Origin: Botryllus schlosseri
Taxonomy: Eukaryota
Direction: 5' to 3'
Length of the DNA stretch: 64,000 nucleotides
Assembly (NCBI GenBank): GCA_051294905.1
Contig: CM119385.1
Location: 8,184,001 to 8,248,000, forward strand
Shown: one piece after another, positions 1 to 62,074 of the stretch
Numbering within the stretch: position 1 is the stretch's first letter
Layout: every line of letters begins with the position of its first letter
Made by a program: the position numbers and the translations under genes
Notes under the pieces: generated by a model
Told to the model about the DNA's origin: nothing
Seen by the model: the letters and a program-made list of their open reading frames with translations, nothing else
Database searches by the model: none

Positions 1-169
1 AATACTCAATTCAGATTCAAGTACTAGAATCGGTATGCCCAGCCCTGGTTTTATGTAGATTCTTCTTAATTTCGTATCATTTTGTGCCCGCTATTTTATT
101 GAATTGAAATGATAATCAAAACTATATCTGTTGTCGTGTCAGGATATTTTTCGTAAGGGACGTTTAGTC

Positions 170-41199: not shown

Positions 41200-44100
41200 C
41201 TAGTCTGGAAATGTTGCCGGTCGTATCTTCATGCTTGAAGTCTTCAGGGAGTACCACAGTCCGGTCCAGGGGCCCCAGATCATTGCGTTGTCGAAGCCGT
41301 ACAATGTGTCAGTCGCTCTTAAGACACGATGTATATTTTAGCGTGAGGTTATTTAATCGTAAATTTTAGTCACGATTGGTTAAAGCAGTCGGCGTAGAAA
41401 TAAAAGTAACGTGGAAAATTTCTCCTCAATTACCAGTGGAAGTACAAGAAACAGGTCAGGAAATTACTGAAGTAAGTACTTCGGAAAACAAGATTTGGTC
41501 GGGGGCTCACATATTTTGCAGTTACTTGGGAGGGGGCTATTTAAGAATTTCAAGATATGCGTCTGACGCAAAATGATTATATTGATACTAAAAATAGATG
41601 TGAATTTCGAAATATACTCTGTCGCCGTGCTACGGTGGCTATTGGTTTATTATTAGCAATTTTATCAGTTCAATACACCACAAAAAATGCGATACAATGA
41701 AAAGACAGGAAGATTTCGCCCGGTTGTTGTAATAGCTTCATATGAGTGATGTAAACATCAGGGTTGTAACCAAAAGTCATATGGTTCCGAGTCACAAGTC
41801 AAATCTCACTTTTATAGATTTGACTCGAACCAAGTCGAGACATTTTTAATTCACCGCCGAGTCAAGTCCAAGTCAGTGAAAAGAGGGTCGAGTCCGAGTC
41901 ATGGTGTTGTGACCCGAGTGCGAGTCATTGTGTTCACTGTTCAGTTTTGAGTTTAATCCGGTGCAATCCACTTGTTTCAACTCTGCTCGAATGATATAGA
42001 ATGGCTCGCATTCATGATATCGTAATTTTCCTCAGTTCTAGCAGTTTCTGGTCCTATTTTCCAAGTATCGGGACTGATAGACGAAATGCCAACAATGTGG
42101 TGACTTGACTATTCTTTGAAGTTGCAATGAAAAGTCTGTCTTTGCCGTCGTCCTAGTCTCCACTCATATGACTTGGTTCGACTCATGCACAATGGCTCGA
42201 GTACAAGTCGAGTCGATACACAAATTGCCTCAAGTCGAGTCACCAAAAAGTCATGACTCGAGTCATTACAGCCCTGGTAAACAGCCCTATACTTCTACTC
42301 TTCAACATCCAAAGTCTAAATAGTTTTGTCTCAGAACTGTTAAGTAGACAACGTGACAGTAGCCTAGCCTAAGACAGTGGTTCTCAACCGCCGGTCCGCC
42401 AGGTAGGCAATATCACAATCTTATATACCTTAATTTCAAGATGCAATGTTGAAGGCTTGCCATTGATAAAATAAATACGACATCAAATTTTGAACTGATT
42501 CAGAACGTCGTGAGGTAACATTAGGGCTGGAAACATGTTCAATTTGACTTGAAGTTCAAGACGCGTCATTTGACGACATGCGAGCGACAAGTACAGAACA
42601 GATACGAGCTGACTCATCGCTAAACAGCGCAGTTTGCGTGATCATTCGTTTTCGATTCATTTGTTTTGTGCAGGACCGTAACTGGGGCACCCCAAACCGC
42701 CCAATTGGAGAGGCGTCGAGCTTAGAAGGGGGCCAAAACTATTTTGCAAATGATCATTCATCATAGCGTATTTTTTGTCGGCAGCGAGAAAACCGATTCA
42801 GTCATGAATGATAGAAAATTTTCGCTATTGGCGCGATTAAGCTACATAAACTCTCTGCTTACACTGAGTAGAATGAATGTGCTCACAATTACAGGTGAAA
42901 ACATGCACCCAACTGTGGGGTCTGGGGGCAAAGCTCCCAGAAGTTTGGCTTATCGCCCTGTGGGGGCCCAAGACAAACGTTTTTCGGGTGGGCTGACGAA
43001 GTGTTTTTTCGGCCCGGATTTGCGGATGGCAGGTATAGCTGCTGTAAGGTGTGTTCGTGTGGCGCATTGTATTCGTAGGTGCCAGAGTAGCCTGCGTCTG
43101 GTGGTAGTGGGCAATGAACAAGGTGCTTGGTTCGACTCCGAAACGCTTCTTCTCTCGATATTGTCAAAGAGAAAGATATTATTCGAGTTGGCGCGGTCGG
43201 TTAAACCCACGGTCTTCTGCGCGAAAGACTAAACGATCGGCTGACTCTCGATGGTAGCATGTTTTTATCTGGACAAGGCAATTTTACCTCGACTCGGCAG
43301 ACTCGATCACTACCACAAAATCACATGGATACCATCATGAAGATGATTAATTACGAATTACGATCGAACCCTCCAAATGTCACTCTCTAGCACCATATAA
43401 TTGCAAAAAACGGTTGCATACTTTACATTTTGGTTTCATTTCAATTTTTGAAAGACCACCGGTCCGCCAGAAATCTTTTGAAATTTTACCGGTCCGCGAG
43501 GTGAAAAAGGTTGAGAACCACTGGTCTAAGAACATGGCTATAGTTGAGTGAGTAGTACAAGCAGATAAAAAAAAATTAAGTACCCCAAAAAGTAGAAGTA
43601 GGCTACTTCGTTACTGACTAACTCTAATTTTGGTACGAAGACAGTTAACAAAAGACATTTCACCGAAAATAAATAAATTATCATTAGTGGATTGTTCAGG
43701 CGCATTGGCTGCGCCGTATATCGTATCTACAGAGTGAAACCAGAGATGAGCATGGACTAGGATTAGGATTTGAAAAAACCGGATTTGGTAAATTTTGTCA
43801 GATTTGGATTGGATTAGGATTAGAGATTTTTTCTGAACGGATTAGGATTTGGATTGGATTATCCGATTTTCTGGGAGATTGATAGGTCGTGTGGCGAATG
43901 ACGACAAACTTTATTCAGATCAGTTATTAATGTAGTTATGGTACACTACACTATGGCACACTCGCTGCCAATGAACATGAGAGGTGCATCCCTATGCTAA
44001 GTTATCTTAAATCTATAGAATTGTTGGTTGTGAAAGAATAATTTCCAATTCCTCCCTTGCATAAATTAGCATTTTTTCTGAATTTCAAGTTACAATCGGA

Positions 44101-47100
44101 TTAGGATTAGACATGGATTTGAATATACAAAAGTTCTGGATTAGGATTTGGACTAGGATTTGAAGCTTCGGATATGGATTGGATTAGGACATAGAAATTT
44201 CAAATCCGCTCATCTATCATCGCTTATCTCCATATTATAAGAAACTTCGCATTCTTAAAGTTGAAGACATATATATTTTTGAATTAGCAAAGTTCATGTA
44301 CAAGTTTAACAAACAAGAAGTTCCAGATTCACTTGTAAACTACTTTGAATACTGCATGCATATACACAACTACGGTACTCGATCTAAGAGCTCTTCCAAC
44401 CTATTTATGTCTAATTCCGACAATGCTTTTCCTCCCTTGAAGCGTGCTGGAATCGATGTGTGGAATAAATTGCCCCCGCGACTTAAAAGTATGAGTTTTC
44501 CGTCATTCAAGACGGAGTTCCTTGACTTACTTCTCAGTAAGTAGTAGTACTAATCGCCATCGGATGTACTCCCCATGTACTATTGCATCAAGGCATCCAC
44601 TATGTACTTCGTTGTTGTTTTTCTATTTTCGTTGATTTATTTTTGATTTTTTACAAACCACCATAACTAGTAAGCATGAGTGTATGTATCTATTCTATAT
44701 ACTTGTTTCTAATCTCCTAGGTTCCGGCTTGACATGAAGATCGTAAGGATCATATCGCCGGCACCCGTCTATACCGTTATAGAGCCAGTTACATGCTATT
44801 ATTACTGTGTATGTGTTGCTATTATTACTGTGTTTTTTGTTTTGTTATGAGTAATTTTTTGCATACTCATTCTGTTTATTCCAGTTGACGAAGAAATAAA
44901 TCTCTCTCTCTCTCTCTCTGAGTGAAACACGACCAGTAGGCCTGCGTTGTTAGAGTTATGATATGACGTCACAATACTGGAATTCCCCGTAAAAACAGTA
45001 GGCCTAGCTAACAGCAGACTAACTGCCAACTATTAGGAAACTTCAACTAAAGATGGACTACCTGTAAAATCCGTTGTTGTAGATTCTGCCGTTCAGGTTA
45101 ACAGCCGAGCACCGGTTGAACCACCAACCGCCGCCATCTTGATGAGCGCAGTCATCTGTTAATCGCATCATGACCCTTATCAGCCACTTTAGAGATACTT
45201 TACCAGGGTTGTTAAATCCGGACCTTGTCCGTCTCGATATTTAGTTTTTAGCAAAACCAAATCAATTATCGTTGATTTGCAAAAAGTGCAGACAGTGTTT
45301 TTATTCTTTTTGCTCATTTGCAGCTGTGATTCAGCGTTTTCAAACATGAACTTTATAAAGAACAGATTTTGTTTCTGTATGACAAGTGAAAACCTTCACC
45401 ACCGCCTTCACTCGCTCTCACCACTTGAAAATTGAGATTCAAAGAATTAGCGAGAAATAAAAAGTGCCAATTCTCCGACTAGCGGTGACTATAACAATAA
45501 CAGATCAACAAATACATTTCGCTTCTTGCTTTTGCTAATAACGCTTTTATATATCGTTATAGCGTAGGCAATTGCATTTGTATGACAGTAAATTCTTCCA
45601 TGAGCGCTATAACGGACTTGAGCAAATTTAGTAGCTCTGTATTATACGCTCAATCCCCGCAATAATACCTACACTGATACATATCGTTGTCACGGTCAAA
45701 CGTGCTGAAGTTCATTCCGTCGTGAGAGGTATACATAATATCGTCGACGTGTCCGAAGTTATGCCCGAAAAATCCGTCGCCAATGCGCATGTCAGGCTCC
45801 GCCGCGGGCACGTATCCCGTGACGTGAAGCTGATACTCGGAATCCTCCGGCCCGACTTCGAATGTCGTGTATCTCGCGTATCTGAGTTGAGTTTATTATT
45901 AACGATTTCGTCCTTTGCAAAACACCACAAGATTGCGATACAATTCAAAGATAGGGAGGTGTCGAAACGTTTTGAAGTAGTCTTTAAAATCAAACATCCA
46001 CCTGGGTCATGTAAGGAAGATGTATGCACACTGAATAAAACGTATTATAAGATAATATAAAAAGATAACATAATAATAAAATAAAAAGCACAAGCAGTAA
46101 AAATGAGGTGGCCTGAGTCGGAAGGCGGAGTCGATATATCAGATCGTATAGTCCGGTTATCTCCAGCGCTGACTAGTAGCCTATTCACCAGAGGTAATCA
46201 ATATCGAAGTAGGCCTACTTACAGGCAAAACCAAGTCAATAATACTTACTTGTTTTGCTTAGAGATCGCTACTTGTACTTAAGTAGAAATTTACGACGAT
46301 ACTTCTTCTGTTACTTCACTACCAGCGATGACCACCTTTGGTATTGACCCATTGAACCAATTAAAGTTTCAGAACTATATCTTACATTCGACATTTATAC
46401 ATACATACATGCATAGAATCCTACCCTGTGTTATCAGACCAGTCGGTTACATCAACTTGCAGGTGGTAGCGACGGGCTGACGTAATTGCGTGGATGGCTT
46501 CGTTTCCGATCCAAAAGTTTCCCCCGCCGTTGCAGTTCACTTCCCCGAATCCGTTCTTGTATGATAGCCAACTTCTGTTGAAATCTAGCACGTTGTCAAC
46601 GTGACTGTGAACGTAAGTCCAACCGCCGCCATCGTCCTATACAATAAAAAAGCCAGCTTAGTCCTTGAGGTCGTATTCCGATGGTAAGAGATCTAACTAT
46701 CACTCATATCAGAACTTCCGTTTAACAAATAGTGGTCAAAGTGGTTAACGTTGCTAGCCAAGTAGAAGTATCAATCACGCCGTGAATTTCTACTCATTTA
46801 CATGTAAAAGTAGCAGTTTTCAAGTTATGCCAAAACTACTTCAATTGAACATTTTCCATTTGGCTAAAGGCACTTTGACGGTAATTTTTGACCGGCTTGC
46901 CGAGCGCGAAATTTGATAAAACGGGTATCAATCGAAAGCTACCGCAGTACTGATTGCGAAAATATAATTTTGTTTCTGCTCGTGGTCCTGGAACCCCCCC
47001 CCCCAAAAAAAATATGCCTCGAATGTTGCATTGTAACGAAGTTTGGTATTGTGGCGCAACGACGCCATCTGGGTGCAGGTGAGAAGCAGCGCAAACCGCA

Positions 47101-49072
47101 AGCGTTGTCGCGCAACCGATTGAGCAATTGAGCATTCACACTCTTATACTCTCGTGCGCACTTGCTCCTGAGCTGCTCAGACGGTGGCGTCACAATACCA
47201 AACTCCGTTACAATGCAACATCCGAGGCTGATTTTGGTGGATTCCAGGACCACGATCACAATATAATTAATATTTTCGCAAGCAGTACCGCGGTAGCGTT
47301 CGATTCATAACCTATTTATCAAATTTCGCGCTAGGCAAGCCGGTCAAAAATTACCGTCAAAGTGCCTTCAGCCAAATGGAAAGTGTGGCATAGACTAATT
47401 TCCCTGAGCCGTGAGATTTGCTTGTGTCCACACTCGCGCTGCTGGATTCTGCGTGTAGGAGTCAGCGTTAATAGTGTCTAAGCTGATATAACACTTGCGC
47501 ACCTCCTGATCGCAGTAGACCGGAAACGGCACGGACCCCGGCTTCTCTTGAAGAAAATACACCCCGCTGTAGGTTCCGCCTTTACGTAAGATATCCGCGC
47601 AGTCTAAATCGTGAGTCCTTCATATATTAGGGTCATTAGCGACATATCAAAAAAGCAATACAAACGTACCTTTACCGATAATTTCGCTGGGACACTCTAC
47701 TGTTGAGTTCCCGCGGCAAAGACTTACGATCGAATTCATTCTGTTGCGTAGTAAGTGTATTTGCTCGATAGCTTGGCCGTGACCTCGCATGACTTCGGCG
47801 GTGATGGCCCCATTGTCTTTTACCAGGGATGTTATTTGCTCTGCTTTCTCCGATAACTGTTGATAATCGATGTTCCTTTCTCTTAACTCATCTAAATCGT
47901 AGACATCAAATTAAAATTGGGTTCGCGGGCCGGAGTCAAATTCAAAATTAGCGCGGACTCTATGCCTGAGTTCAAACTATCTTGAGAGAACAGGAGTGGA
48001 ATGTTAGCTGTGTCATCCAGGTTTGAACAGTAGAGACATACTGCGCCAATCGCTACTTGAATGCTACGTATTTGTTTGCGGAGTGTAGTCAGAGTGGTCG
48101 GGACGTTTTTATGCTACATAGCCGACAACGTTGCTTTCGGTACGATGTTGCGTTTAACTCTTACCGTTACGAAGGCCAATGCACCACCGACATTTCCTAA
48201 AATCACTATAACAGACTCGGAAAATTAAATCATTGGATAATTTGAATAATTAGAGCGAAATACCGGTAAGCTAGTTCTAAGCTAATTTGTGAAATGTTTC
48301 AAAGCTCTAATTTTATTATTATTATTATATTATTATTATTTTATTAATATTATTATTTATTATCTATTTTATTATCAAATATCTGCTCTTCCTCAAATTG
48401 GTACAGTAGAACTGTATGCAGCGCGAAACTACAAGGTGGGTGTACAGAGTTGCCATTATCGTTCTTATATGAGGATGAACTCTGATTTGATACGAACTGA
48501 ACTTGATTTTCGTTGCATTTCTTTCTAATAAAGATTTTAATTACATTTCCAATATTTTTCGAATTACATAATTCTAATTGCACTGTAATTTGAAAAATGG
48601 GTAGCAATAATTCAATTCTATAATCCAATTGGAAAAAGCTGTTTTTTTTTCTAGATGCCCAGCTCTGCACGGTATGTGCGATTCTTCAGCGTTATAGGGT
48701 GACAAGTTTTCCATCTTTGTACCTGCTGTCCGCGATTCAGGGTCACTCGCAGGCTGGCGCAGCTTATCCAGATCCTTCCGTATTTTTTTGATGTTCGCCG
48801 TCAAGTGAGACAGCCGCACTTTGGTATCGTGTTCGAACGCTTCTTGCGCTTTTGCGGTGTGGCACGATGTCTCGGCGAAAATCTGCGATTACATTACAAG
48901 CCTACATCGTTACGAGAAAACTCACTGTACTTTCTATCTACATAGATGGGTCAAGATTGCGATCTAGATTCGAACGACAGCTGTCCATTTTTAGGTAATG
49001 CACACTTACTCTGTTACTCCACAAAAGATGTAAGATTAAGAAAAGCCCCGAAACGTGCATCTTCGTAGTCAT
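41200..49072 (-). CDS. Secreted fibrinogen-like protein (signal peptide + coiled coil + FReD), 'gene C', beta/gamma-chain-like
   Basis: Exons 49072-49010, 48882-48723, possible unresolved exons near 48200-47950, 47891-47670, 47603-47503, 46636-46425, 45881-45673, 45155-45062, 41317-41200. Signal peptide [24 protein letters not shown]; [21 protein letters not shown]; [50 protein letters not shown] and [27 protein letters not shown]. Confidence 0.9.
41759..42276. mobile_element. hAT-type MITE (GACTCGAGTC family)
   Basis: TIRs CAGGGTTGTAA / TTACAGCCCTG; TSD GTAAACAT / GTAAACAG. Confidence 0.85.
42375..43523. mobile_element. hAT-type non-autonomous element with a nested repeat
   Basis: TIRs CAGTGGTTCTCAACC / GGTTGAGAACCACTG; TSD GCCTAAGA / GTCTAAGA; CCGGTCCGC subterminal motifs; contains a copy of the 15646-type repeat. 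Confidence 0.8.
43741..44218. mobile_element. MITE-like element rich in GGATT/GGATTAGG repeats
   Basis: Ends CAGAGATGAGC / GCTCATCTAT; clustered GGATTAGGATTTGGATTGGATT motifs at both ends. Confidence 0.6.
44215..44544 (+). mobile_element. 5'-truncated LINE (CR1/L2-clade-like) ORF2 C-terminal fragment
   Basis: [50 protein letters not shown] resembles the post-RT C-terminus of CR1/L2 LINEs. Confidence 0.7.
48309..48375. repeat. (ATT)n microsatellite
   Basis: Directly visible imperfect ATT run. Confidence 0.85.
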
Positions 49073-50990
49073 CGCCGCAAACTGTATTGTATGCTATATT
49101 ATGTCACGCCATGTCTGCCTTGTTTAGCTACATGATTGAGTGTCAATATTTGATAATGTGTAGCTGCTACGTTATCGTTCTTAGTCAGTAACAAAGAAGT
49201 TTTGGGATTGTTATTTACAAATTTGTCAGTTTGTCTCCGAGGTGGTCAGTACTTCTACTTTATTGCAGTACTCAAGTAGGTTTTGTGAATGCCATATTTG
49301 CATGGATTTTCATCACGTTTACGAGTAGAAATATTATAGCAATGAAATTCAGTTCGATTTGTTATTAACAATTTCATCATTTCCATACACCACAAGACTG
49401 CGATATAACGAACAGATAGGAAGGTGTCGAATCGAGTTTGAGTAGTCTTTGAAATCAGACCCCACCTGCCCTATAGGCGATGTAAAAAAGGAGGCACGCA
49501 CACTGAAGGAAATGTGAAAGAATATAATACAAAAAGACAAGCGGCAAAATGAGGTGGCATACGGAAGACGAAATCGGTTATGTCAGGTCGTGGTCCGGTA
49601 AACCTGAGGGATGACTAGCATTTAATCAGTAGAAATTGCTTGTATTTCGACTTGGATGTGGACATGCTCGACGACTGTCGGATAGCCTGCGTGATACTGT
49701 TCCACACTGCAGCAACCGGGATGTAGCACATCATGAAAATTGCAACTATTTGTCATTGTTATATAATAGAAAAGTTCCATCTCGCAAACTCGAAAACAAA
49801 ATCACAGGCGATGGACAAAAAAGTGTCCGACCTATCGGCCCAACATAACTTCTACAGACTACTTAGTACTCTTCAGATCGCATTTTCTACTTCAACCTCA
49901 AGTAGTTTTTTTCAATGCCATGAAATTCGCTACTTCTACTTGTAATTGAGCAGGGATTCACTTCACTACATCTATAAGTACGTGTCCTCAACGACTATAT
50001 TTTACCACCTCTGGTTTTTCTATCAGAATGTGTATGTATGACACGATAAAATGGATACAATATACATGTCCGACAACATGTTACTCAAACCAATTTTCTG
50101 TGAATCTCGATTCTATACCAGCGAGAAAAAGCGTTGGCCTATGGATGTCTTGATTTTCTCACAAATTCAGGTTTTCCGCGCCATTTTGATGTTCCTTCTA
50201 TTGTGCTCGGGCACACTCACTGTCAAATTGATTGTATGAATATATTTAAGAGATAGTTCAGTCCGAATTCTAAATATATCTCTACAATTACGTATAGTAA
50301 GTCCGAATATATACTTCTACGATCTTAGCGAAAAGACAGTGCATTTACACCATTGTGCAACCACTGATATACGTTTTCCACTGCCTGCTGGCACCGCTCT
50401 GTTCGTGAATCAATACACCAAAATAGATTTACTTCCCGTAAAACAGTGGTTCTTCACATTTACTAGGATATTGAACTAATCTGTAAGCGTTCTGCGTTCC
50501 CAACTTTTTGTCTGGTCACAAAAACAAAAATATACCATACTACACATCTATAATAATATATCACTATAGGATAGGCCTACTGGCGCACAAAATGAACCGT
50601 GCCTCAACAACAACGTCAAAAGAATAAAATCATTGAGACATGATTTTGACACATAACAAACGATTATGATTAGTATTTACTGCAGATCAGTGTTACTTCT
50701 ATGCTGCATGAGTCGTGTGTGTGTCCTGGCGTCCATCGAACCCCTGAGACTGACTCAGCGAACCCGTGGGGCTCGTGTGAACGCCGGTGAAGAACCACTT
50801 CTATAAAGCCGATTTCTGGCTACACGCTATCCTGAGCACCTTTAACAATATGCGCACTTCACGGTATAGCCTATAAATTTAGAACTTTCAGCTGGGATGT
50901 TCGCGATCTAGATATCATTATGATTCTTCGATCTTCGTGTGCCATGATCGCTACATATATTTACATATTGGACAACAAATAAACGCTTCG

Positions 50991-53900
50991 TTAATTTCGG
51001 TGATATCTTAAAATTCGTCTTTGTTTTCTCCTGCGCGCCGAACTTCTCCTCCACCGCCTTGAAAGTCGCCTTATGATTTTCATATCATTCATCTTTCGTC
51101 GTCTCGCAATCTCTTGCCTGTCCGGTAGAATAGGATTTTGATCCGGCCTGAAAGCAAGCGGCCTGACTTTCATCGTCGATCCTTTGAGCGATTCGTGGCA
51201 TCCTCGCCACGTATTCCAGATGATCCCGTCGCTTACTGTGTGAAATTTATGGTATTTGGAATGTATAAGATTAGTCGAACAGTCTATTTGCACTGTACCT
51301 TTCGCAGTGCCGACAGGAAGCTGTTGTGTAGTACGTTTACGTATGCCATTCAAATTGGCCGAGAAACAGTCGCTGTACCACCAACCCCCTCTTCCGTGAT
51401 CTGAAATGAATTGTTGGGTTCAAGACCACTCGAAAATCCCGCAGGATATGGTATCAGCCGTGAATCGATAAAAAATAAATACACGTGAAAATTTTTGGCA
51501 GGCCCGCGCGAGTTGTTGATATTTTGACATTTGATGGAGAGTTGCCGAATGCCCACCCTCGTAGTCTTTTATACAACCATTGGTGGTCAGTGTAGTCAGC
51601 GATCTCAAGTATAGAACTTTATATACTCGATTACAAGAAGAAATATATATTTCACACATGAAAGGGATGCAATGTTACCTCAAATTAGTAAAACCATGAG
51701 TAGTCGAAAAACATGCCCACTGGAGTACGCCCTGGTATAGGTAGGCAAAATCTACTTCAGTACTGTGAAAACGTAGAAGTACTTCGTTTCTGACCACATA
51801 TGTTTACGGCAATAGTTACTTTGTTGTGAAAAACTTCTGATAATATAAAGATATTACATCAGCCAAGGTATAATTATTCGATTACCGGCACAATTTCCCT
51901 GAGTGCGGTCGTTGTCATGGTCTTTTGTGGTAAACTCTACCCCGCGATGACCAGCTGCGACGATATTCGGAGTTGTGTTGTTGGAACATACGCTCTGTGT
52001 GTTTGTTCCTAAGGCATCGCCCACGTTGCCCGCTGGGTCCGCTAAATATCCATCAATGGCTTTTAGCTTGTATCCATTCATTTCATCATCGACGGCGAAA
52101 TATCTTTAAAACCAATGCTGCACGATAATACGAACATATTTGCCGTAACATGCAATGACTTAACATACCTATATATCGCAAATCTATCCACACCATCCCA
52201 CGATAACAAGTCGATTTTCAGTTCTGTCAAGTTTTGTCGTGTCGACCTGCGTCAAATTTGTAGATGAATGCATCGTATATTCTTGTGTTGGAAAGATTCG
52301 CTTACATGTGAATGTATTCATTTCCTATCCAGTATTCCCAGTTTTTGTTATGTTCCTTCTGCCCGAAACCCCATTTGTAGTCCTCCCAGTTGCGGTCAAA
52401 ATCTACCTGCCCGTTGTATCGTCGCTGGATAACTGTCCAGCCTCCACCGCTGTCCTTCATGTCGCAGTAGACCTTCGAAAGGTCGTTGTCGGAGTTACAA
52501 TTTCACGTCGACGCGATTTTCAAAACGGACTTATCGATACTCCATGAGTAAAACATGTACGGATTTCAATAATACAGTACACAGCACGGCACGACACGGT
52601 GCAATTATTGCTAAAACCCAGGGTTGTAACCAAGTCACATGGTTCCGAGTCACGAGTCAATCTTACTTTTGAGGTTTTGACTCGAGTCAAGTCGAGTCAT
52701 TTTCAGTTCATCACCGAGTCGAGTCCGAGTCCAAGTCCCCGTTTAAAGGGTCAAGTCCGAGTCATGGTGTTATGACTCGAGTCCGAGTCCGAGTCACAGT
52801 ATTGAAGTCACGTTCAACTCATGTTTTCAATCCTGCTTGGGTGATGTCGAATTCCGATGCTACAGATCGACAAGACAGGCCAATATGATAATTCTACTAA
52901 TCTTAGAACTTAAAATCAAATATCTGTCTTGTCATGTCAGTCCGATATACATCACAAATATAAGCATTTAGTTTTTTTTTCGATCACATCGACGACAGCT
53001 CATAAATAGCTGATGGAGCCAACGAATTCACGTCTACATGCTATCTGATATAGAACCAACGAATTCGCGTCTAGATACCAGCTAATAGAGAATCAACAAA
53101 TGCATGTTTATGTCTGGAGAGGTATTTTCACCAGGCCAGCATGCTGTAAAAGCGTGCATGCAGCTATGTGCAGTGACAAAAGAACGGATACATTTTGATA
53201 TTACTAAAGGTTTTCCCAATTGCATTACAGACTACATCGCAGTTACAGCATTGGAGAAATAATTGTACAACGGAGCTGTTCAAAATCATTTTTTCAAATT
53301 TTCCGAATACTTCTTAAAATTGTACATAGTAATTGTACATAGTAAAGTCATGCTCATGTCACATCGATAGGATTATTTATCAGCCTAATGCCTGTGCGCA
53401 ATGCATCACTGAGCTATATAAACACCGCACACCTGCTGGTATCCAACCGTTTATGGTCACGACTCCATTTCCAATATGAAAATGTTCCGTGGCCCAACTC
53501 AAAATTTGATAGGCTGATTACTAATTAAAGGTCGGCACATTTGCCCAGACTTATCCACGGCATATTTGGAAACTGATTTGATTGCATTCAACATCTTCAC
53601 GAACCCAACAATAAAGGCAACTTACCCCCAGGTTTAGAACCTCTATCTTTGAATAAAGCATTGAAACGGCGTAAACCGACTCTACGAATATACCGTTATC
53701 TTGTATTTGTAATTGCGATTACAATTAGACTTATTTCTGTAAATGAATGTTATTTTTATTTATCTTTGATCGCAGTTTTTGCGAGGGTGGTAGTCCCCAT
53801 ATTAAAGCCGACACATGTGATACTAAATCGCGCGTAGCGCGAACAAAAATTTCACGTAGCATAAATCTACCCAAACATAATATTGTTTATATGGATTTAG

Positions 53901-55609
53901 GAAAAAAATACGAGCTTGCTTCAAAATTCCAGACAGTTAGGCATATTATCGAAATTCATCCGGGATGCAGTTTTAACAGTGAAATTCCGGACATGTCCGG
54001 GAAATTCCTGACGTCTGGCAACCCTACCTTAGAATATACCCACCTCTAATGAATACACGTTCCAATGGTGCACTAGATGCAGGAATGGACAAGCATTTTT
54101 GAACCACACTGAAGAGCTTCAAATCCACACAAGAGCTTATCAGTCTAGCTCTTCCAAGCACTTGACCATCTGAGTCATTGCATTGGCTCTAATTGAACTT
54201 TGCTTCGATTGTTTGCTTGTATAATAGAAAAGTCTTGAGTACATTGATTGCGGAGGATCTATTACACCTTTATCACTGGATTATTTTGTGCAGTGCATTG
54301 CTAATATGTACCATTGTCTGTTGTTTTTACGGCCGCATATCTGATATCAGACGAGTGCATCGGAAGCAGTGGTGACAAATAGCGATGGCGGCAGAATTCG
54401 TCAGATGCGTTGATCTAGCCATTACGATTTGCAAATTTCTTCATCTTCAAGTCATATAAAATAAGCCGAGTCAATGACTTGGGTCGAGTCATGCGTAATG
54501 ACTCGAGTACAAGTCGAGTCAATCCAAATATTGACTCGAGTCGACTCGAGTCATTTTCCCATTTCAAGAAAGTGACTCGAGTCAAGTCGAGTCACAAAAA
54601 AATCGTGACTCGAGTCGAGTCATGACTCGAGTCATTACAACCCTGCTAAAACCTATTAATTATCTTAGCCATATAGGCCCCTACTGCTATCTTTATTCAT
54701 TTATGCTTCGAGAGGTATAATACTTCATAGGTTTCAGTAAGTTCTAAAGAAGATATATATTTTGAGTTCAGTAATAATTCCGTGTGCTCAATCACATACT
54801 TTGATTAGTCTGTTTGATCCCATTGGACGAATGAAGTAGAAACCATTCTTTCTACCGCCTTTGCTGTGGATTTCGGCGCAATTTCTCCCAGTTAAAACCG
54901 GAATTCTTTTGTCTCCTCGTGCGAATTTTTCTCGGTAAGCACGACTCTTACAGGAATAGTCCAGGGAAAGGGATTCGACCTGCGAAATACTAGCTATGTT
55001 AATCATATCGAGCGACATCTGCTGCGTCATACACAACTTACATTCGCAGCTTTGATTGCAGCGTGAAGTTCCTTGTTGAGAGTAGCTGTGCCGGCGATAT
55101 CAACGTCCGAAATTACTGTATCGGTCTTTCTACTCAACCTTATAACGTCTGCCAATTCCTTCTTTCTTTTCCGGTAGCTTTCTGATACATTGAGCGCATT
55201 TGTATGAATTCAATGTGGCTGATGTCATTTTCAATTCCAGTACCGGCTGATGTTTGAATCTGTTTGTGAGTGTTCCTAACGTTATCAAGATCTATCATTG
55301 CTGCCTTTACTCTGGAGTTCAATAGCGCCTTCTTTTCCACCTGTATCTTATGAAGGAGTTCCTCAGTTGGGCATGTAGAGTTCTGAAGATCGTACCTAAT
55401 GCAAAAATACCCCTATGCTTGTCAATTACTTATCAATGTAATTACCCATCTTAAATTCCCACAAAACTCTTGTCCGCTGCTTACTTGAAGAAAGCGCGCC
55501 GTTTCAAATAGCTGAAACAGATGTTACATACTAAATTTCTACCCGAAAATGCGGCATTTTACGTAATGAAATAGCTGTCACTTACTAGTAATAAGAGACA
55601 CATTTCCAT
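50991..55609 (-). CDS. Secreted fibrinogen-like protein (signal peptide + coiled coil + FReD + Arg-rich tail), 'gene B', alpha-chain-like N-terminus
   Basis: Exons 55609-55586, 55511-55446, 55382-55244, 55181-55042, 54979-54800, 52472-52306, 52246-52169, 52103-51886, 51400-51299, 51235-50991, all phases consistent. [21 protein letters not shown] signal; FCGNLRWNSTCPT; [12 protein letters not shown]; [18 protein letters not shown]; EYWIGNE; FTTKDHDND; [15 protein letters not shown]; [21 protein letters not shown]. Confidence 0.9.
52619..54645 (-). mobile_element. 2.0-kb deleted hAT transposon, likely parent type of the GACTCGAGTC MITEs
   Basis: TIRs CAGGGTTGTAA / TTACAACCCTG; perfect TSD CTAAAACC; contains a transposase remnant. 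Confidence 0.85.
54027..54130 (-). pseudogene. hAT transposase C-terminal dimerization domain remnant
   Basis: Reads [34 protein letters not shown], matching the h[17 protein letters not shown] motif; followed by a TAGGGTTGCCAG element end. Confidence 0.75.
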
Positions 55610-56569
55610 TCTATCAAATATTTTGAATTTCTATTTCTCTGAACTGCGTTAATGTCGTGGCAAATAAATAATTCTTACGAAGAGATCAACAAAGATTAGG
55701 TCTTATACGTTCATTATGAGACATGAACGCAAATATTTTCGGAAGTTATCTTTACTGTGGATTTTAGAGTACGGGATTGTTTGTTCCATTCTACGCAGCA
55801 TTCTTTCCGATGACATTTACATGCTGACGTGCTACGTGAAACTGCAAACTAGTGCAATCTGTCAACACATAGTGGGCGCAAAGTCAAAAGATTGAATCGA
55901 CATCTTTTGATTCATCTCATGTCTGTTTTGTCATAATCAAAATGTACGAATCCAGAGGTTTGATTTTACGATACTATTACTATTACATCTTTTTGTTACA
56001 TACTTTGTTGCGCCGACCGCCGTTAGCAGGCGATATGTACAAACGTAAGACCTTGGTAGCTTCCGCACCCTATCCAACGGCCACTTGTAAATGAATATAA
56101 CTTTTTTAATTACACGAGCTTCCGGAGCTCTGCTCCTTCATCAGGTGTTAAAGCGACAGTAACGCAGAAGAGCAATCTTTTTGTTAGTGATTGTTGTTCA
56201 CTCACTGACATATAGTGGCTTTTTAATTCAGTGTTCTTACTATTTCGCTATATAGGTTGATGTGTCCTGTCTGAATCGTAATGGTCTCAGCGTCTTACTA
56301 ATTATCTGAATAGAATCTAGGAAGAACCGATAACAAGAAATTGCATTCGCATATACATGATGATACTATTGAACAGGCATAGCAATGGCAGATGAATGTG
56401 GAGTTCATCATTGAATACCCCAGGCATCGCCATCATCATTCGCTGCAGTATTTGTATATTTACTCGTAATCCAAAATCTTTATATGTAGGCTATGCATAT
56501 GAGAGAGTAGAATTATGAGGTCAGGATACAGGATCTTGTATTTTTTGCTTAGCTGCTGGACTGTCCATT

Positions 56570-57262
56570 ATAGGTTTGAGGGTTCAACCTCTGCGATGCA
56601 ATCTCGTTGTGCCTTTTGAACTCGACTGGGAATTTTGAAAAAATCGTATTAGTCGCGCGGAGTTCCGCTTGAATTTACATTATACAATATTTAATCTCAA
56701 GTTCAGCCTTCACAATTTCTTCCCCTGCTGTTCTTGTCGGCTTAGTTTGACTCTGTCGGGTGGCAGGCGATAGTCATTCGCCGGGGTGGTTCTTTTTCTG
56801 GTCACTGGTGTCAATGACGTGGTAGTATTCAAATTATCATGTGGAATCGGTTCGGATGTGCCAGCAGCTGATGGCAGGTAGGCCTATGTCAGATCACAGT
56901 TTTGTGAACCCGGGATGCCTTCTGCAAAAATAGCTCCTCCAATGAAGCTTGCTATTCTAAAATACAATTCCAAAGGATATCTTGCTCCATTTTCACCACT
57001 CCCAGTACTGCCTAATTATTTTGTAGTCCGTCACATATTTCTTTGCAAGAGACTTCAAGTCGAACCACTTTGTTTTTACTCTTTCTGCCTCCAACTTCGG
57101 TCCAAAGCCTACGGCATTTATTGTTTCGGTCATTTCCGACCACCTTCCGTCAACCATTGCCTTTGTTTTCGAACCGGATATGTCTCCGGTAAGAACATGA
57201 TAGTTTTCTTCTACCTTCCCAACGAGCAGATTAACCTCTTCCGTACACCACGACCTTGACAT
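56570..57262 (-). pseudogene. Myb/SANT-like DNA-binding protein of PIF/Harbinger ORF1 type, frameshifted
   Basis: WCTEEVNLLVGKVEENYHVLTG..RWSEMTETINAVG..VKTKWFDLKSLAKK; continues after a frameshift with TGSG..IASFIG..EGIPG and a degenerate coiled-coil tail. Confidence 0.75.
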
Positions 57263-58053
57263 GATGCGGACTTCTTGTCAAAGTTAGTACACTCTTCCGA
57301 CTGCCTTACTAATTCCCGAAAGTGTCGCGATAGATAGTCGGTTGTCTCGCGAATCCTATTTGGACTTTCGGAAAAAAAGCATTCAGACAAGAATATGCGA
57401 TTTGAAACCGTGTGGATGAGAACAATTAGGACATTGCCGACAGCGTAGGAAAATTGCCATGTCATATCTGGACTGTTATGCGGAAAACTTTGGTATCGAA
57501 AATAGTCTTCAATTCGTTTCAAGCTCATCATTAATCAAGATGTAAACAAATATTAATGCGGGAATAAGCAGCTCATTGATTAACGAAATAAAGTGTGGAA
57601 GTTTCCCTAACTCGTCACGAACAGACGTTACGAGTACGAAAAGAATATGTAGGCCCTACTATGCCTTATTTTGAAGACAAATATTCTGTTCAGTTAAGAA
57701 AGTCATGAACACGATCACGAATGAGCATGTAATACACCTCGAGGAAGTTCCACTTCAACGCAACTCCAGAGATTTCACCATATAGTGCTTGGCCTTAGAT
57801 ATACGATATGCGAGATAAATAAGGCCACTCTGTATTCGTCGATAAAACACTGAAATTTTACAGTCCACACGATAACCCAAACTCTAAATTCACGCTGTCC
57901 AAGTGTCCATTGTTGTTAAAGAGTTATCAAAAGTATATAAGATAGGTAACTGCGAGTCTGAAACTCAAATTCCCGCCAATCACATTATATTTCTTTCAGT
58001 CATCAGGTCTCTTTGAAATAACAAACAGTATATAATATCTATTGTGTAGTTCA

Positions 58054-61000
58054 TTACGATCTCCCATCGAAACCATAAGGGCGCAGCTTAATTTCTGTTT
58101 TTCGTAAAGAATATTTTCTTCCCCTCCATGATGGCCATATTATTCCCGTGGGTTGTAACCGCGGGTCGAAAGTACCTGGTAATAAATGTACTCGCCTAAT
58201 AACAATATCCAGCAATAGCAATTTTACCACAATTAATTACCTTCATGATAAAATCCATTCAGGTTCGCCCCCTGACATGAGTCGGCCCACCAGCCTTCGA
58301 ACGTATTCAGACAAGATTGCGTCAAGTGCAACTTTTTGTCCCGCGAAGAAAATTTCGCACGAGTTTGTGGTCCTGAAATTCTGAAGAACAACATCGGAAT
58401 GTTTGCGCTTGGTTGATTGGGTCGATGTCTATCGCGACCCGAGTTGTCATCCATAGAGGTAGAGCTCGTTTCACTGTGATGGTGCATCTGCACCGGTATC
58501 CGATATAGTGTTTATATGTCCAAGCACGAATAGGTATCATATAGTAAAGGGCTATATATGTGATCACAAGTATTAGTCAACACTTCTAGCAAATTGTATT
58601 GCATAGATATTTTTGATAATGATTCCGCGGTATATTCACGATAACGCGGTGGATAATGCTGATTTCAGGGTGTCCTGTTTGTAGATTGGCAACATAAGAA
58701 ATTACCTTACATCATAGAATCAGAGCAGTTGCTCACATCTTGTTCGTAGTATGACAGTTGAACGGTGTAAAGGTGCTCGGCAGAATTGACTTTGAAGTAG
58801 GAGTACTGCGCCACTCTAGTTACGTCATCCCAGTCTGTCATGACGATGCGAATGGTCTGAAACCCAGCTTTGCCAATCTCAACAAGATTCTCATTTCCCA
58901 GCCAGAACTCTGTTGAACAGGACGCCTGGCCAAAACCTAAACAGAAAAAGGCAAGTTTAATTCTTATGCGATCAAAATAGCATAAACGGGGACACTTGCA
59001 CCCTTTTCCGCGAAAATTTGAAATTTTAAAGATTGTGGTGCCTTTCGACCGATTAGGCAATCTTCACATTGCTCTGAGCTCGAACTTTGATTGTGCCTGT
59101 ATTTCTGATAGGGTATTTCCAGAAAACGAGCAGAATCGTCTTGATAATATGGTTTGTGCCGGCGCTACAATTTAAATTATTCCTGACTTCGACCTGGCAG
59201 AATGATTCGAGTGCTCGAATCCGAATCGAGTATATTAATTGTAACGATTCGAGTCGGAAACTGAGAGACGTTTTTCTCAAGCACTGAAACTAAACGCCCT
59301 TTTCTCTAAGAGTTTTATTATCTACGAAAATTACATAGTTTCGATGCTTTTTTCCCACCGTGGAAACTTTGAAACCTTCGATTAATCCGGTCGTAAGATC
59401 CAAAACATGTAGGACACGTCTACTCGCATTATAGTGCAAATAGCAATTTTCTGAAGAAGTGATCAGTGTAGGGTTGCATTTAAAACAAAAATGAATTCAA
59501 GCATACATGTTTGAAACATGGCCCGTTTTACGACGTGCTTTTATGGTTTGTTTTTTGTTTGTTTTTTGGCCATGACGTAACAAGTCTTTAAATGGTGACG
59601 TCAGTGTGAAGTGACATTGACTATTGAAAATGCATTGTAAGGATGACTCCTTTGACGAAAAAGGCTTCCGTCACCTGCCTTAAACGGCCCAAAAAATATA
59701 TTTGAACCAATCCATATCGCATACGGCGACTATATTGGGTGCAAATCGTCCGCGTAGGCTCATACTACCAGTTTTTTTTTTAAAGTATTTACACAACTAT
59801 TCGTAATCGAATCGTTCATACACGCTCGGTTTTTCTCATCCCTAATCGTGATTCGTTCTGAAATTGGTAACAACTGCGGACTATGACGAGGTTCGATTCA
59901 TTACCGGCTGCGTACTCTGCCCAGGTCCTGTTAAAATCCACGGAACCGTCAACCCGTCTCTGAACAACAGTCCAACCACCTCCCGAATCCTAAAAACGTT
60001 AACCAAAATTAAAGAAATATGAACCCGATCGACGATTCATCGTATTACATCCATGTCGCAGAAAACGTAGAACGAGTTCACGGGCTTTCGCGGAGTGATC
60101 CGATATATGCCGCTGTCTTGATATGAAATATTATTGTGTTAGATTCGATCGTCCATCACTGACCAATGAATATGACAACCAGCCTTCTTCAAGTTTCCTA
60201 ATCAGACTAGCTAGACCCAGTGGTTCCCAACCTGTTTCGACTCTTCGCCCCCTTATCCAGCTCGACACAAATCTATAAACGGGAAGTTCATTCACCTGCT
60301 GTGTTTATTCAATTGCGATCGTTGTAGAATTGACTAAAAAGAGTGATTTTTTCCGAGTAGGTGCTCGTAAAACCGGTTCCCGGGTCTACTTTCCGTTGAG
60401 TTGACCTTTTTTGCTTCATATCTCACAAGACGTTCTAAAATTATCGCCCGCCCCTATCGCCCCTAAGGTATTTTCTCCCCTTGTTTCTCAAAATCGCCCA
60501 CTGGGGGCGATATTGTCCACGTTGGGAACCACTGAGTTAGCGCGAAATGTCGGTTATCTAATTTGTGAAAAGTGTCTATGCTCTAATTTTAATTCTAATC
60601 CAACTTCTGGTTTTCCTGAAAATGCTACAGGACAACTGCATAGTGCGCCATTCCCATGCTTACGAGAATGAATTCTGAGTTGATATGAACTGAACTTGAT
60701 TTTCGTTATATATATTTCTAATTATTTATTTCTAATTATTCTATGTCCTAGTTTTTGCGAACTCAGTAATTATAATCCTAATAAAATTTGGGAAAATTCT
60801 AATATATTTTGGAGAAGCTGAATATTTTCTAGTTGTGGAACCCTGACTGGATGTGCTACCTCGATGTCCCTTGCTGTGAAGCTCAGCGCAGCTCTTCGCC
60901 TGCGGCGCCTCGAACAGCGGACACACCGCGCCATCTTCTGACTCGCGAATCATAGTGGCCGACGCTCTTTGGGCCGCTTTCAAGCATAACGTGTCGTCGT

Positions 61001-62074
61001 CGCCACAGCCACCGTTGACCCGCGACCCCGGCGGTTCCACGTTTTGCGGCGTTATTTCTAAACGGAATATATCCGGTAAAAGATCACGCCGGTCGGCGGC
61101 ATATCGATAAGATAGTTACGGTCGTCGTCGTCGTTACAGAAGTTCTGGCAATGATGGCGGATGGTCGCGAGTTCGCGTAGGAGATCTGTGTACATAAGCA
61201 ATTCATAACTTTATATAAATTGGAAATGGTGAAAGCATGAGTAATGCTCATTGAGCATACGCTTAGCAGGGATGATAATTTTGAGGGAGAGTTTAATAAT
61301 CAAGTGTCAGCGGTGACGTAGTGAACGTAGATGACGTCACAATCTTCAGTCCGCGGCTATACTTGGCTGGGCGCGAGATGATTTTCACGCATATACACTG
61401 TACAGTTGTAGATGGAGGTGGTCTTTAACGGAGTACTCCACCTATACGGAGTACTTGAGTAGATTGTTCCTACTTGCACTAACTTACTCAAGTGCTTCAC
61501 TTCTTCTTATCAGTTTTTATGGGAAACTAATTCCCTTTTGTATCGTTTGGATATTATTTGCGTACTATTTATGACTGAAGTAGTCATAACTACGAAATTG
61601 CCCTTGTGTCGCGGTTACTGAATTTGATTTTTGAGAATTACACCTATTTGTTGTTTTACTAGTCGCTTCTCGTTAGTCGCGAATATGCACGATGCAATTT
61701 AGAATGTCGCCACATATTATTAACTGTTAAAAGACTGCGACCCCACCAGCAAACCTACCTTTTGAAACTATACTTTCTTGAGTACTTTTCATGTCGTGAT
61801 TTTGTAGGCTTACTTTCTCGTGAAGCAGTTTCGACATGTCTTAAAAATCGTAACTTTACTCGTAAATGAAAACAGATTTGGGGACTAACTTCTACTTCTA
61901 CTTCTACTTGGGTATCAACGTCGACTACTTTAACCAGCTCTGGTTCTATGTCCATACTTTGTAATTCTGAGTTCAGCTGGTCTGTCTTCCGTCGTACAGC
62001 GTCGTATTGACGTTTTTGGACCGATACTTCTGCAGAGAGCTTTACCATGGCGTCCCGTAAAGTGGAATTCTCAT
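58054..62074 (-). CDS. Fibrinogen-like protein (coiled coil + CxxxC + FReD), 'gene A'; 5' exons unresolved and probably further upstream
   Basis: Exons 62074-61958, 61185-61120, an exon ending at 60860 (acceptor uncertain), 60116-60049, 59989-59905, 58936-58711, 58380-58241, 58175-58054. Motifs [78 protein letters not shown] and [23 protein letters not shown]. Confidence 0.85.
60218..60534. mobile_element. hAT-type MITE; second copy at about 40155-40500
   Basis: TIRs CAGTGGTTCCCAAC / GTTGGGAACCACTG; shared CGACTC..CCCC..AGCTCGACACAAA and GGGGCGATAT blocks; TSD not clear. Confidence 0.7.

What the first reader, a model, noticed from the sequence alone, without database searches (positions are those of the whole stretch)
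41200..62074. Three-gene fibrinogen-like cluster in apparent gamma-alpha-beta order in a non-vertebrate-looking genome
Seen: three tandem minus-strand genes, each encoding a coiled coil with flanking Cys motifs and a C-terminal FReD. Gene A has CQNFC (human gamma CQEPC), gene B has FC..WN..CP and SCKSRA (human alpha FCSDEDWNYKCP and SCSRA), and gene C has [18 protein letters not shown] (human beta CRTPCTVSCNIPVVSGKEC). Established: vertebrate FGG-FGA-FGB are clustered in that order with FGB inverted, and a three-chain fibrinogen-like set has been reported in Ciona. Inference: this may be an ancestral heterotrimeric proto-fibrinogen locus predating clotting. Caveat: the chain signatures are mosaic (gene B enters its FReD in a beta-like way; gene C's P-domain is gamma-like).
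Basis: partly seen in the sequence, partly recalled or inferred. Interest (0 to 1): 0.85.

Follow-up and report, generated by a model that had tools for sequence, protein, structure and literature searches.

The report
Sea-squirt three-chain fibrinogen-like gene cluster
Three neighbouring genes in a sea-squirt genome encode three different chains built like vertebrate fibrinogen but without the parts needed for clotting; a protein of this kind has been reported in the sea squirt Ciona, so this is another example, with new detail on gene order and on how the chains may be linked.

Summary
Three minus-strand genes lie 1.9-2.4 kb apart: A (436 aa), B (452 aa) and C (392 aa). Each has a leader, N-terminal cysteines, a roughly 100-residue coiled coil with a central break, a distal cysteine motif and a Pfam fibrinogen C-terminal domain (FReD). 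Gene A's first exon lies 2.3-2.6 kb beyond the window end and carries YCPSTC. Its best matches in the whole PDB and Pfam are fibrinogen gamma N-termini and Fib_alpha, both below threshold.

The genome is a tunicate, so the precedent is Doolittle's 2012 Ciona protein.

- The coil exons are unique in the genome.
- The variable FReD exons match fibrinogen gamma best.
- The ring cysteines (A two, B one, C one, at each end) suit a 1:1:1 trimer bridged by A.
- A trimer of the N-terminal coil halves scored 0.81 against a best control of 0.42.

Against it:
- B and C coils show no detectable similarity to alpha or beta.
- All three FReDs look gamma-like.
- B and C gene models have no RNA junction support.
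- No tree with vertebrate chains could be built.

There are no fibrinopeptides or knobs. The scan has not found this on other DNA. Verdict: new member of a known kind, of moderate interest.

The parts
58054..62074 (-). Gene A, exons 2-9 (aa 97-436 of 436). Exon 1 (aa 1-96, MSIVLK...YCPSTC...PTKAS) lies outside the window at L001:2303-2591 = G000:C15:8250303-8250591.
   Evidence: Spliced 1819-nt transcript contig in X25; three of the same junctions on a 501-nt contig in X1 and a fourth as a single X1 joint. Model, all GT-AG. Transcript variants are 14 synonymous to 9 nonsynonymous.
61136..61150 (-). Gene A distal ring motif CQNFC (Cys148, Cys152). The matching proximal CPSTC (Cys45, Cys49) is in exon 1, outside the window.
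60860..61057 (-). Gene A exon 4: acidic, Cys-containing linker of about 60 aa between the distal ring and the FReD ([13 protein letters not shown]), ending at the FReD start [11 protein letters not shown].
   Evidence: No Pfam family.
58054..60893 (-). Gene A FReD (aa 213-436). The calcium-site motif is lost (FSSRDKKLH) and the P domain is shortened. Extra Cys203 and Cys281 sit at beta-chain-like positions.
   Evidence: Pfam Fibrinogen_C on exons. Exon 7's best PDB match is lamprey fibrinogen gamma, 35.3 bits. Alignment.
50991..55609 (-). Gene B, 10 exons, 452 aa: signal peptide, FCGNLRW|NSTCP, coiled coil, SCKSRA, FReD, Arg-rich tail.
   Evidence: Hand model with complete ORF, all GT-AG. RNA-like runs X1-X3 hold 0.20-0.32 of the stretch's words, about an mRNA's worth. 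Junctions not verified.
55446..55466 (-). Gene B FCGNLRW (Cys25). With NSTCP at 55368-55382 (Cys34) it gives the spacing F-C-x4-W-N-x2-C-P of the human alpha chain. No second ring Cys follows (CPTEE).
54938..54955 (-). Gene B distal single Cys (SCKSRA, Cys133), 24 residues before the first FReD Cys.
50994..51119 (-). Gene B C-terminal Arg/Lys-rich tail after the FReD (whole-protein net charge +28).
41200..49072 (-). Gene C, 8 exons, 392 aa: signal peptide, single N-terminal Cys28 (ETSCHTAK), coiled coil, [18 protein letters not shown], FReD. The last intron is 3.7 kb and holds a repeat.
   Evidence: Hand model with complete ORF, all GT-AG. Exon 3 has a 36%-identical exon-level homologue from another sample with the same C-x7-C pattern (P0002).
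47599..47718 (-). Gene C distal motif: one ring Cys (Cys133; Ser where a CxxxC second Cys would be), then Cys141 and Cys150, spanning a 66-nt intron.
41209..47670 (-). Gene C FReD (aa 149-390). Calcium-site motif intact (FDRDND); [10 protein letters not shown] pocket stretch resembles gamma; loop Cys217.
   Evidence: Pfam. PDB: exon 6 hits only fibrinogen gamma (36 bits), FGL1 (27), alphaE (24) and beta (21). Exon 5: Ang-1 63.5, alphaE 59.7, gamma 58, beta 40 bits.

Best explanation
This is a tunicate 'proto-fibrinogen' locus. Three old paralogous genes encode three non-identical secreted chains with the fibrinogen layout: leader, N-terminal cysteine knot, a roughly 100-residue three-stranded coiled coil with a central non-helical break, distal cysteines, and one FReD per chain.

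Inferred mechanism: the chains assemble 1:1:1 into a parallel, in-register heterotrimer. Chain A alone keeps both CxxxC motifs, so it is disulfide-bonded to the single cysteine that B and C each carry at each end of the coil. This gives an 'open ring' with two of fibrinogen's three bonds at each end. The product would be a rod carrying three different FReDs.

Because there are no fibrinopeptides and no GPR/GHR knobs, thrombin cannot make it polymerise. It most likely acts as a multivalent FReD lectin or adhesive protein of the haemolymph.

Shown: the genes, their domains and cysteines, gene A's transcript, and the uniqueness of the coil exons.
Inferred: heterotrimer, disulfide map, secretion, function.

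As a set, the three chains probably share their origin with vertebrate gamma, alpha and beta. Only A = gamma has sequence support.
For: - Gene models with complete ORFs. A's splicing is fixed by transcript contigs from two studies. A is under purifying selection, 14 synonymous to 9 nonsynonymous variants.
- FReD in all three genes.
- Cys map: A 45/49 and 148/152; B 34 and 133; C 28 and 133. That is four ring Cys at each end, enough for two interchain bonds. A homotrimer of B or C would leave an odd Cys.
- Spans agree: B 34-133 is 99 residues and A 49-148 is 99; C 28-133 is 105 and A 45-152 is 107.
- All three share a phase-1 intron in the central coil break. A and C share a phase-0 intron at CDMx|DxGGGW.
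- A exon 1: the four best PDB matches are fibrinogen gamma N-termini (E 0.15-1.5; ILxE....YCPxTC). About 1e-6 per sequence, for a comparison named in advance.
- Fib_alpha is A exon 1's joint-best Pfam match (tied with GST_C_2), E 0.066.
- A has a Pro-containing break after 'TY', as gamma has at Y68-M78 (PMC8150326).
- The variable FReD exons of A, B and C all have fibrinogen gamma as best PDB match. C exon 6 hits no angiopoietin, ficolin or tenascin.
- Coil exons are unique in the genome. C exon 5's best paralogue genome-wide is B.
- Complex prediction on A 38-96 + B exon 3 + C exon 2: score 0.81, best control 0.42. That mark was reached by 51 of 78 solved complexes and 2 of 108 mismatches. 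Runs agree on at least 85% of contacts; partner pLDDT at least 51. The register puts B Cys34 level with A Cys45 and C Cys28 level with A Cys49.
Against: - B and C coil exons give no fibrinogen hit in PDB or Pfam.
- No Fib_alpha match above the cut-off anywhere in the genome, searched exon by exon.
- A's matches are below threshold.
- CxxxC rings are incomplete in B and C, and the coils are about 13 residues shorter than in vertebrates.
- The conserved FReD exons of B and C score highest to angiopoietins.
- One of three complex runs scored 0.01. No homotrimer was tested. A pass may only reflect likeness to the solved fibrinogen coiled coil.
- B and C junctions are not RNA-verified, and alternatives exist.
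- Gene A's leader (MSIVLKIYIMYF) is a weak signal peptide.
- Expression of C was not tested.
Confidence: 0.6

Rival explanations
1. These are fibrinogen-clade genes, but the trio arose by duplications within tunicates, independently of the vertebrate alpha/beta/gamma split. The resemblance in gene number and order is then coincidental. The products may or may not co-assemble.
For: All three FReDs are closest to the same vertebrate chain, gamma. C's closest paralogue in the genome is B. Signatures are mosaic: the beta-type extra Cys pair occurs in both A and C, and C's pocket stretch is gamma-like. B and C coils show no chain-specific similarity.
Against: A's N-terminus matches gamma only, not alpha or beta. 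B carries the alpha-type F-C-x4-W-N-x2-C-P spacing. The order A-B-C equals gamma-alpha-beta along the direction of transcription, about 1 in 6 by chance. The three are only 27-34% identical with mostly different FReD intron positions, which means old duplications.
Confidence: 0.22
2. These are ordinary coiled-coil FReD lectins of the angiopoietin/FGL/ficolin sort that form homo-oligomers. The fibrinogen-like motifs are short chance or convergent matches in a genome with hundreds of FReD genes.
For: The genome holds at least 151 FReD exon hits, many in tandem arrays. B exon 6 and C exon 5 score highest to Ang-2 and Ang-1. No significant Fib_alpha hit.
Against: Cysteines sit at both ends of a coil of matching length in all three. 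The 2+1+1 stoichiometry does not suit homotrimers of B or C. A's N-terminus finds fibrinogen gamma first among 177,635 PDB sequences. Variable FReD exons prefer fibrinogen gamma or FGL1 over angiopoietins and ficolins. There is no collagen-like region. The complex test passed.
Confidence: 0.12
3. One or more of the genes, most likely B or C, is a decaying or mis-modelled copy, so no three-chain protein is made.
For: B and C have no junction-level RNA evidence. Alternative ORF-preserving splices exist. A has lost the FReD calcium-site motif.
Against: B and C have complete ORFs across 10 and 8 exons with canonical splice sites and intact FReD disulfide and calcium motifs. B's words occur in RNA-like runs at about mRNA length. 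C's coil exon is conserved at 36% identity, with its Cys pattern, in another sample.
Confidence: 0.06

Closest known systems
[quoted passage not shown]
   Same: Tunicate host. A fibrinogen-like protein without thrombin cleavage sites, hence not a clotting protein.
   Different: No direct comparison was possible: the paper is not held and no Ciona sequence could be fetched. I do not know whether that report covered the tandem gamma-alpha-beta order, the 2+1+1 ring cysteines, A's long acidic linker or B's Arg-rich tail.
Vertebrate fibrinogen (FGG-FGA-FGB cluster; the alphaE form, fibrinogen-420, carries a FReD on the alpha chain too)
   Same: Three clustered genes in the same order. A's N-terminal YCPxTC, and an interrupted coiled coil. 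FReDs closest to gamma. Predicted parallel three-stranded coil with cysteines at its ends.
   Different: No fibrinopeptides, no GPR/GHR knobs and no alphaC region. The third gene is not inverted. Rings are incomplete (CxxxC only in A). The coil is about 13 residues shorter. A's FReD lacks the calcium-site motif. Dimerisation of two trimers is not shown.
Fibrinogen-like proteins FGL1 and FGL2
   Same: Coiled coil plus FReD. Second-best PDB match after gamma for A exon 7 and C exon 6.
   Different: These are single genes forming homo-oligomers. They have no pair of cysteine motifs bounding a coil shared by three different chains.
Angiopoietins and angiopoietin-like proteins
   Same: Coiled coil plus FReD. 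Best PDB match for the most conserved FReD exons of B and C.
   Different: They give no hit, or much lower scores, for the variable FReD exons. They are homo-oligomers and lack the CPxxC...CxxxC frame.

Membership tests
Vertebrate-type fibrinogen (three-chain) | C-terminal fibrinogen-related domain (Pfam PF00147) | tested here: met
   Exons of A, B and C hit Fibrinogen_C, E from 8e-21 to 5e-4. PDB FReD hits.
Vertebrate-type fibrinogen (three-chain) | Each chain has CxxxC 'disulfide ring' motifs at both ends of a coiled coil of about 111 residues | tested here: not met
   Only A has CPSTC and CQNFC, with 98 residues between the two rings. B (Cys34, Cys133) and C (Cys28, Cys133) have one Cys at each end. 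First-to-first spans are 103, 99 and 105, against 116-117 in human chains (my own knowledge).
Vertebrate-type fibrinogen (three-chain) | Coiled-coil region matches Pfam Fib_alpha (PF08702) | tested here: inconclusive
   A exon 1: joint-best Pfam family (tied with GST_C_2), but 13.8 bits against a cut-off of 29.9. B and C exons: none. Genome-wide: none above the cut-off. Only single exons could be scanned.
Vertebrate-type fibrinogen (three-chain) | Thrombin-released fibrinopeptides exposing GPR/GHR knobs on alpha and beta | tested here: not met
   At most about 4 residues (B) and 6 residues (C) lie between the predicted signal cleavage site and the first Cys. There is no GPR or GHR.
Vertebrate-type fibrinogen (three-chain) | Three non-identical chains from clustered genes, in the order gamma-alpha-beta | tested here: inconclusive
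   The cluster and three distinct chains are shown. The chain identities are supported only for A = gamma. B = alpha rests on a motif. C = beta is not supported by the FReD.
Vertebrate-type fibrinogen (three-chain) | Chains assemble as a heterotrimer, then as a dimer of trimers | tested here: inconclusive
   The in-silico trimer of N-terminal coil halves passed (0.81 against best control 0.42). No homotrimer comparison was made. Dimerisation through A Cys18 or B Cys25 was not tested.
Ciona-type full-length fibrinogen-like protein | Tunicate protein with fibrinogen layout, three FReD-bearing chains and no thrombin sites | tested here: met
   Architecture. Tunicate genome: GH6 domain of the cellulose-synthase type above the Pfam cut-off, introns of about 60 nt, and earlier notes. 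The family description comes from the citation in PMC8037105 and my own knowledge.
Ciona-type full-length fibrinogen-like protein | Sequence orthology to the Ciona chains | not testable with these tools
   Spliced proteins have no reference, so no full-length search was possible. The paper is not held.
Ficolin | Collagen-like Gly-X-Y region before the FReD | tested here: not met
   No Gly-X-Y run in any of the three translated models.
Angiopoietin / ANGPTL | FReD closest to angiopoietins over its whole length | tested here: not met
   Angiopoietins are top for B exon 6 and C exon 5 only. They are absent or low for A exon 7, C exon 6 and B exon 8, where fibrinogen gamma leads.

The most novel reading that the evidence does not exclude
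The whole vertebrate fibrinogen locus was already in place in the common ancestor of tunicates and vertebrates: three chain types, each with its own N-terminal knot signature, in the order gamma-alpha-beta. The ancestral molecule was a non-clotting heterotrimer with three FReDs (alphaE-type). In this lineage it is held by an 'open ring' in which the gamma-like chain bridges the other two. Inversion of FGB, thrombin sites, knobs and the alphaC region would then be vertebrate additions to an existing three-gene unit.
Probability: 0.35. Interest if true: 0.7.

Novelty: new member of a known kind. Interest (0 to 1): 0.5.

Why it matters
How vertebrate clotting acquired its substrate is a long-standing question. 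A non-clotting three-chain precursor has been reported in one tunicate.

This locus gives a second tunicate example, and one chain has transcript support. It adds three testable points:
- The genes sit in tandem in the vertebrate order.
- The disulfide rings are only two-thirds complete, in a way that points to one specific heterotrimer.
- Only one chain keeps a gamma-like pocket stretch and only two keep the calcium-site motif.

If the chain-by-chain orthology holds, the locus dates the gene order and the three-chain design to before vertebrates. It also offers a tractable animal in which to ask what fibrinogen did before it clotted.

Tried and rejected
1. I first took the genome for amphioxus (495 Mb, 19 large pieces, hundreds of FReDs). 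I rejected this after earlier notes pointed to an ascidian and my own search found a GH6 domain of the tunicate cellulose-synthase type. An exact search for the Ciona spliced leader gave one near match and settled nothing.
2. An exhaustive HMMER search of 1.84 billion representatives with C's coil exon found one true relative (P0002, an 88-aa fragment) and no full-length protein. Its contig could not be fetched.
3. Pfam Fib_alpha, by exon and genome-wide: nothing above the cut-off.
4. PDB searches with B exons 2 and 3 and C exons 2 and 3: no fibrinogen hit.
5. ESM Atlas with A exon 1: no usable hit.
6. Microsynteny: no LRAT-family hit in the genome. The window's neighbours by my reading of their ORFs, not confirmed with a family search (a WD40 gene, a UBE3A-like HECT ligase, an aldo-keto reductase, a GRHPR-like gene, a CAP-domain gene) are not the vertebrate neighbours.
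7. I planned a profile search with a 287-aa FReD ORF from C2 as a length carrier plus C's exons. The fragments misaligned (A1), so I did not submit it.
8. Full-length homology searches, a tree with vertebrate chains, a full-length Pfam scan, structure prediction and fold search were all left out. Spliced proteins have no reference, and I did not type long sequences.
9. Literature: no paper in the held library describes this locus. Neither Doolittle 2012 paper is held.
Full report
**What is there.** The window is G000:C15:8184001-8248000 of a 495.5-Mb genome. Six-frame reading of 41200-62100 shows FReD-like pieces on the minus strand in three groups, and Pfam Fibrinogen_C hits exons of all three. 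I built the models by eye from three-frame displays and checked them by script.
- Gene B: 10 exons, 55609-50991, 452 aa.
- Gene C: 8 exons, 49072-41200, 392 aa.
- Both have complete ORFs. Every intron is GT-AG and many are 59-74 nt long.

**Gene A and its missing exon.** For gene A I laid public reads on 58050-64000. An 1819-nt spliced contig in run X25 gives all seven junctions inside the window. A 501-nt contig from another study (X1) carries three of them, and a fourth appears as a separate X1 joint. After the stated cut shifts, all junctions are GT-AG. About 307 nt of that transcript lie upstream of the exon that begins at 62074, and none of it lands in 62077-64000. I fetched the next 10 kb and found the missing first exon at L001:2303-2591. 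It reads MSIVLK...NC...ILQEFEVGYCPSTCDVRDEV...PTKAS, and its phase-1 donor joins correctly to exon 2. Gene A is 436 aa. Transcript variants against the reference are 14 synonymous to 9 nonsynonymous, which indicates purifying selection.

**Anatomy.** Each chain has a leader, N-terminal cysteines, a heptad-rich stretch with a central hydrophilic break, distal cysteines and a FReD.
- The central break contains Pro in A and C.
- Ring cysteines in A: CPSTC and CQNFC.
- Ring cysteines in B: CP and SCKSRA, plus FC.
- Ring cysteines in C: SCHT and LCRGNS, followed by TVEC.
- All three carry a phase-1 intron inside the central break: A ...KAS|D|ENS, B ...TSA|E|SYR, C ...RTA|D|ELR.
- A and C share a phase-0 intron at CDMx|DxGGGW. 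The other FReD introns differ between genes.
- Pairwise identity is 27-34%.
- B and C keep the FReD calcium-site motif (D-x-D-N-D); A has lost it.
- C keeps a CAxQDG.GWW stretch like the gamma chain's pocket, judged from my own knowledge of gamma.
- A and C have an extra Cys pair at the positions of the beta-chain 201-286 bond.
- A has a linker of about 60 aa, acidic and Cys-containing, before its FReD. B ends in a 42-aa Arg-rich tail.
- There is no room for fibrinopeptides, and neither GPR nor GHR is present.

**Not a recent expansion.** The genome holds at least 151 scored FReD exon hits from 871 candidates, many of them in arrays. Even so, the coil exons of A, B and C find only themselves in the whole genome, and so do A exon 7 and C exon 6. 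C exon 5's best non-self match genome-wide is gene B.

**Relation to fibrinogen.**
- A exon 1 against all PDB sequences: the four best matches are fibrinogen gamma N-termini at E 0.15-1.5. They align ILQEFEVGYCPSTCDV with ILDERFGSYCPTTCGI.
- That is not significant for an open search.
- Pfam's joint-best family for the same exon is Fib_alpha (E 0.066, tied with GST_C_2, below the cut-off).
- A's break follows 'TY', as the gamma-chain interruption Y68-M78 does (PMC8150326).
- B and C coil exons give no fibrinogen hit, and the genome has no Fib_alpha hit above the cut-off when searched exon by exon.
- For the FReDs, the conserved exons do not discriminate. C exon 5: Ang-1 63.5, alphaE 59.7, gamma 58, beta 40 bits. 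B exon 6: Ang-2 62.5, gamma 58.5 bits.
- The variable exons all put fibrinogen gamma first. A exon 7: lamprey gamma 35.3 against FGL1 28.4. C exon 6: gamma 36, FGL1 27, alphaE 24, beta 21 and nothing else. B exon 8: gamma 20.5.

The trio therefore belongs with fibrinogen and FGL rather than with angiopoietins or ficolins. But all three FReDs look gamma-like, so C = beta is not supported, and B = alpha rests on F-C-x4-W-N-x2-C-P and SC.SRA alone. That first motif spans a 63-nt intron which is not the only ORF-preserving choice. The chosen junction does give a good signal-peptidase site (QVSS|GQ).

**Heterotrimer.** With two ring cysteines in A and one each in B and C at both ends, a 1:1:1 trimer pairs all of them. 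Homotrimers of B or C would not. The spans fit: B 34-133 equals A 49-148 (99 residues), and C 28-133 is 105 against A 45-152 at 107.

I tested the N-terminal coil halves, which are single exons: A 38-96, B exon 3 and C exon 2.
- Score 0.81 against a best control of 0.42.
- That mark was reached by 51 of 78 solved complexes and 2 of 108 mismatched pairs.
- Runs agree in at least 85% of contacts, and the partner's pLDDT is at least 51.
- One of the three runs scored 0.01.

The contacts describe a parallel, in-register three-stranded coil. B Cys34 sits level with A Cys45 and C Cys28 level with A Cys49. With fibrinogen's first-to-second bonding rule (my own knowledge), that gives B34-A49 and A45-C28 and leaves the third bond of the ring absent. 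This supports binding but does not show it. No homotrimer was run, and the pass may reflect likeness to the solved fibrinogen coil. The net charges of the N-terminal halves (A -4, B +2, C +3) are compatible but weak evidence.

**Which organism.** I first assumed amphioxus. Earlier notes of this scan call the genome an ascidian with spliced-leader trans-splicing. I checked this independently. A glycoside hydrolase family 6 domain is known in animals only from the tunicate cellulose synthase (established knowledge). It is present above the Pfam cut-off at two places on C9, and introns of about 60 nt fit a tunicate. The relevant precedent is therefore Doolittle's 2012 report of a full-length fibrinogen-like protein in Ciona. 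That paper is not held; PMC8037105 summarises it as a primitive full-length fibrinogen without thrombin cleavage sites. The held literature describes no such locus in this or other species.

**Expression.** A is spliced and present in X1 and X25. B's words occur in X1-X3 at 0.20-0.32 of a 4.66-kb stretch, about one mRNA's worth. X1, X2 and X6 hold parts of both A and B. Tissue information is not available. C was not tested, but its coil exon has a 36%-identical homologue with the same Cys pattern in another sample.

**Limits.** Spliced proteins have no reference in these tools. I therefore left out full-length homology searches, a tree with vertebrate and Ciona chains, whole-coil Pfam scans, structure prediction and fold search.

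**Verdict.** This is a tunicate proto-fibrinogen locus, most likely encoding an A-bridged heterotrimer that cannot clot. One-to-one orthology is supported for the gamma-like chain, only suggested for alpha, and unsupported for beta. It is a new member of a known kind.

Noticed in passing
window 63224-64000: Very high depth in RNA-like contigs (mean word depth up to about 27,000) and in raw RNA reads on both strands, with many variants and loose ends. This looks like a highly transcribed repeat family lying in gene A's 4.2-kb first intron.
   Followed up: no
window 42744-43232 and L001 7655-8047: Related ORF-bearing repeat (…HPTVGSG…SLAYRPVG…), open on both strands. One copy is inside gene C's 3.7-kb last intron and another is upstream of gene A.
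   Followed up: no
window 51236-51298: Gene B's last intron (63 nt) is in frame and free of stops. Retaining it would insert 21 residues, including a Cys, into the P domain. The spliced form fits the usual FReD spacing much better (17 residues against 18-19 in beta and gamma).
   Followed up: partly
window 50994-51119: Gene B ends in a 42-aa Arg/Lys-rich tail with several dibasic, furin-like sites (whole-protein net charge +28). It could bind polyanions or be removed by proteolysis.
   Followed up: partly
window 60923: An unspliced contig in run X27 carries A>G, which changes gene A Cys203 to Arg. Cys203 is the Cys I pair with Cys281. It may be an allele or an error (depth 6.5).
   Followed up: no
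L002 917-1780 (G000:C2:30991916-30992779): Single-exon 287-aa gene with the best Fibrinogen_C score in the genome. It has a leader and a basic stretch but lacks the first FReD subdomain (it starts at WTVFQRR).
   Followed up: no
window 116-13539, 17948-29012, 30524-31597, 36049-36396; L001 about 6270-9500: Neighbouring genes by my reading of their ORFs, not confirmed with a family search: a WD40-repeat gene, a UBE3A-like HECT ligase with an N-terminal Zn-finger motif, a single-exon aldo-keto reductase (minus strand), a GRHPR-like dehydrogenase exon, and a CAP/PR-1 domain gene upstream of gene A. None is a neighbour of the vertebrate fibrinogen cluster.
   Followed up: partly
G000:C9:15025585-15025875 and 15068570-15068854: Two GH6-domain hits in ORFs of 531-545 aa about 43 kb apart. 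This may be a duplicated cellulose-synthase-type gene.
   Followed up: no
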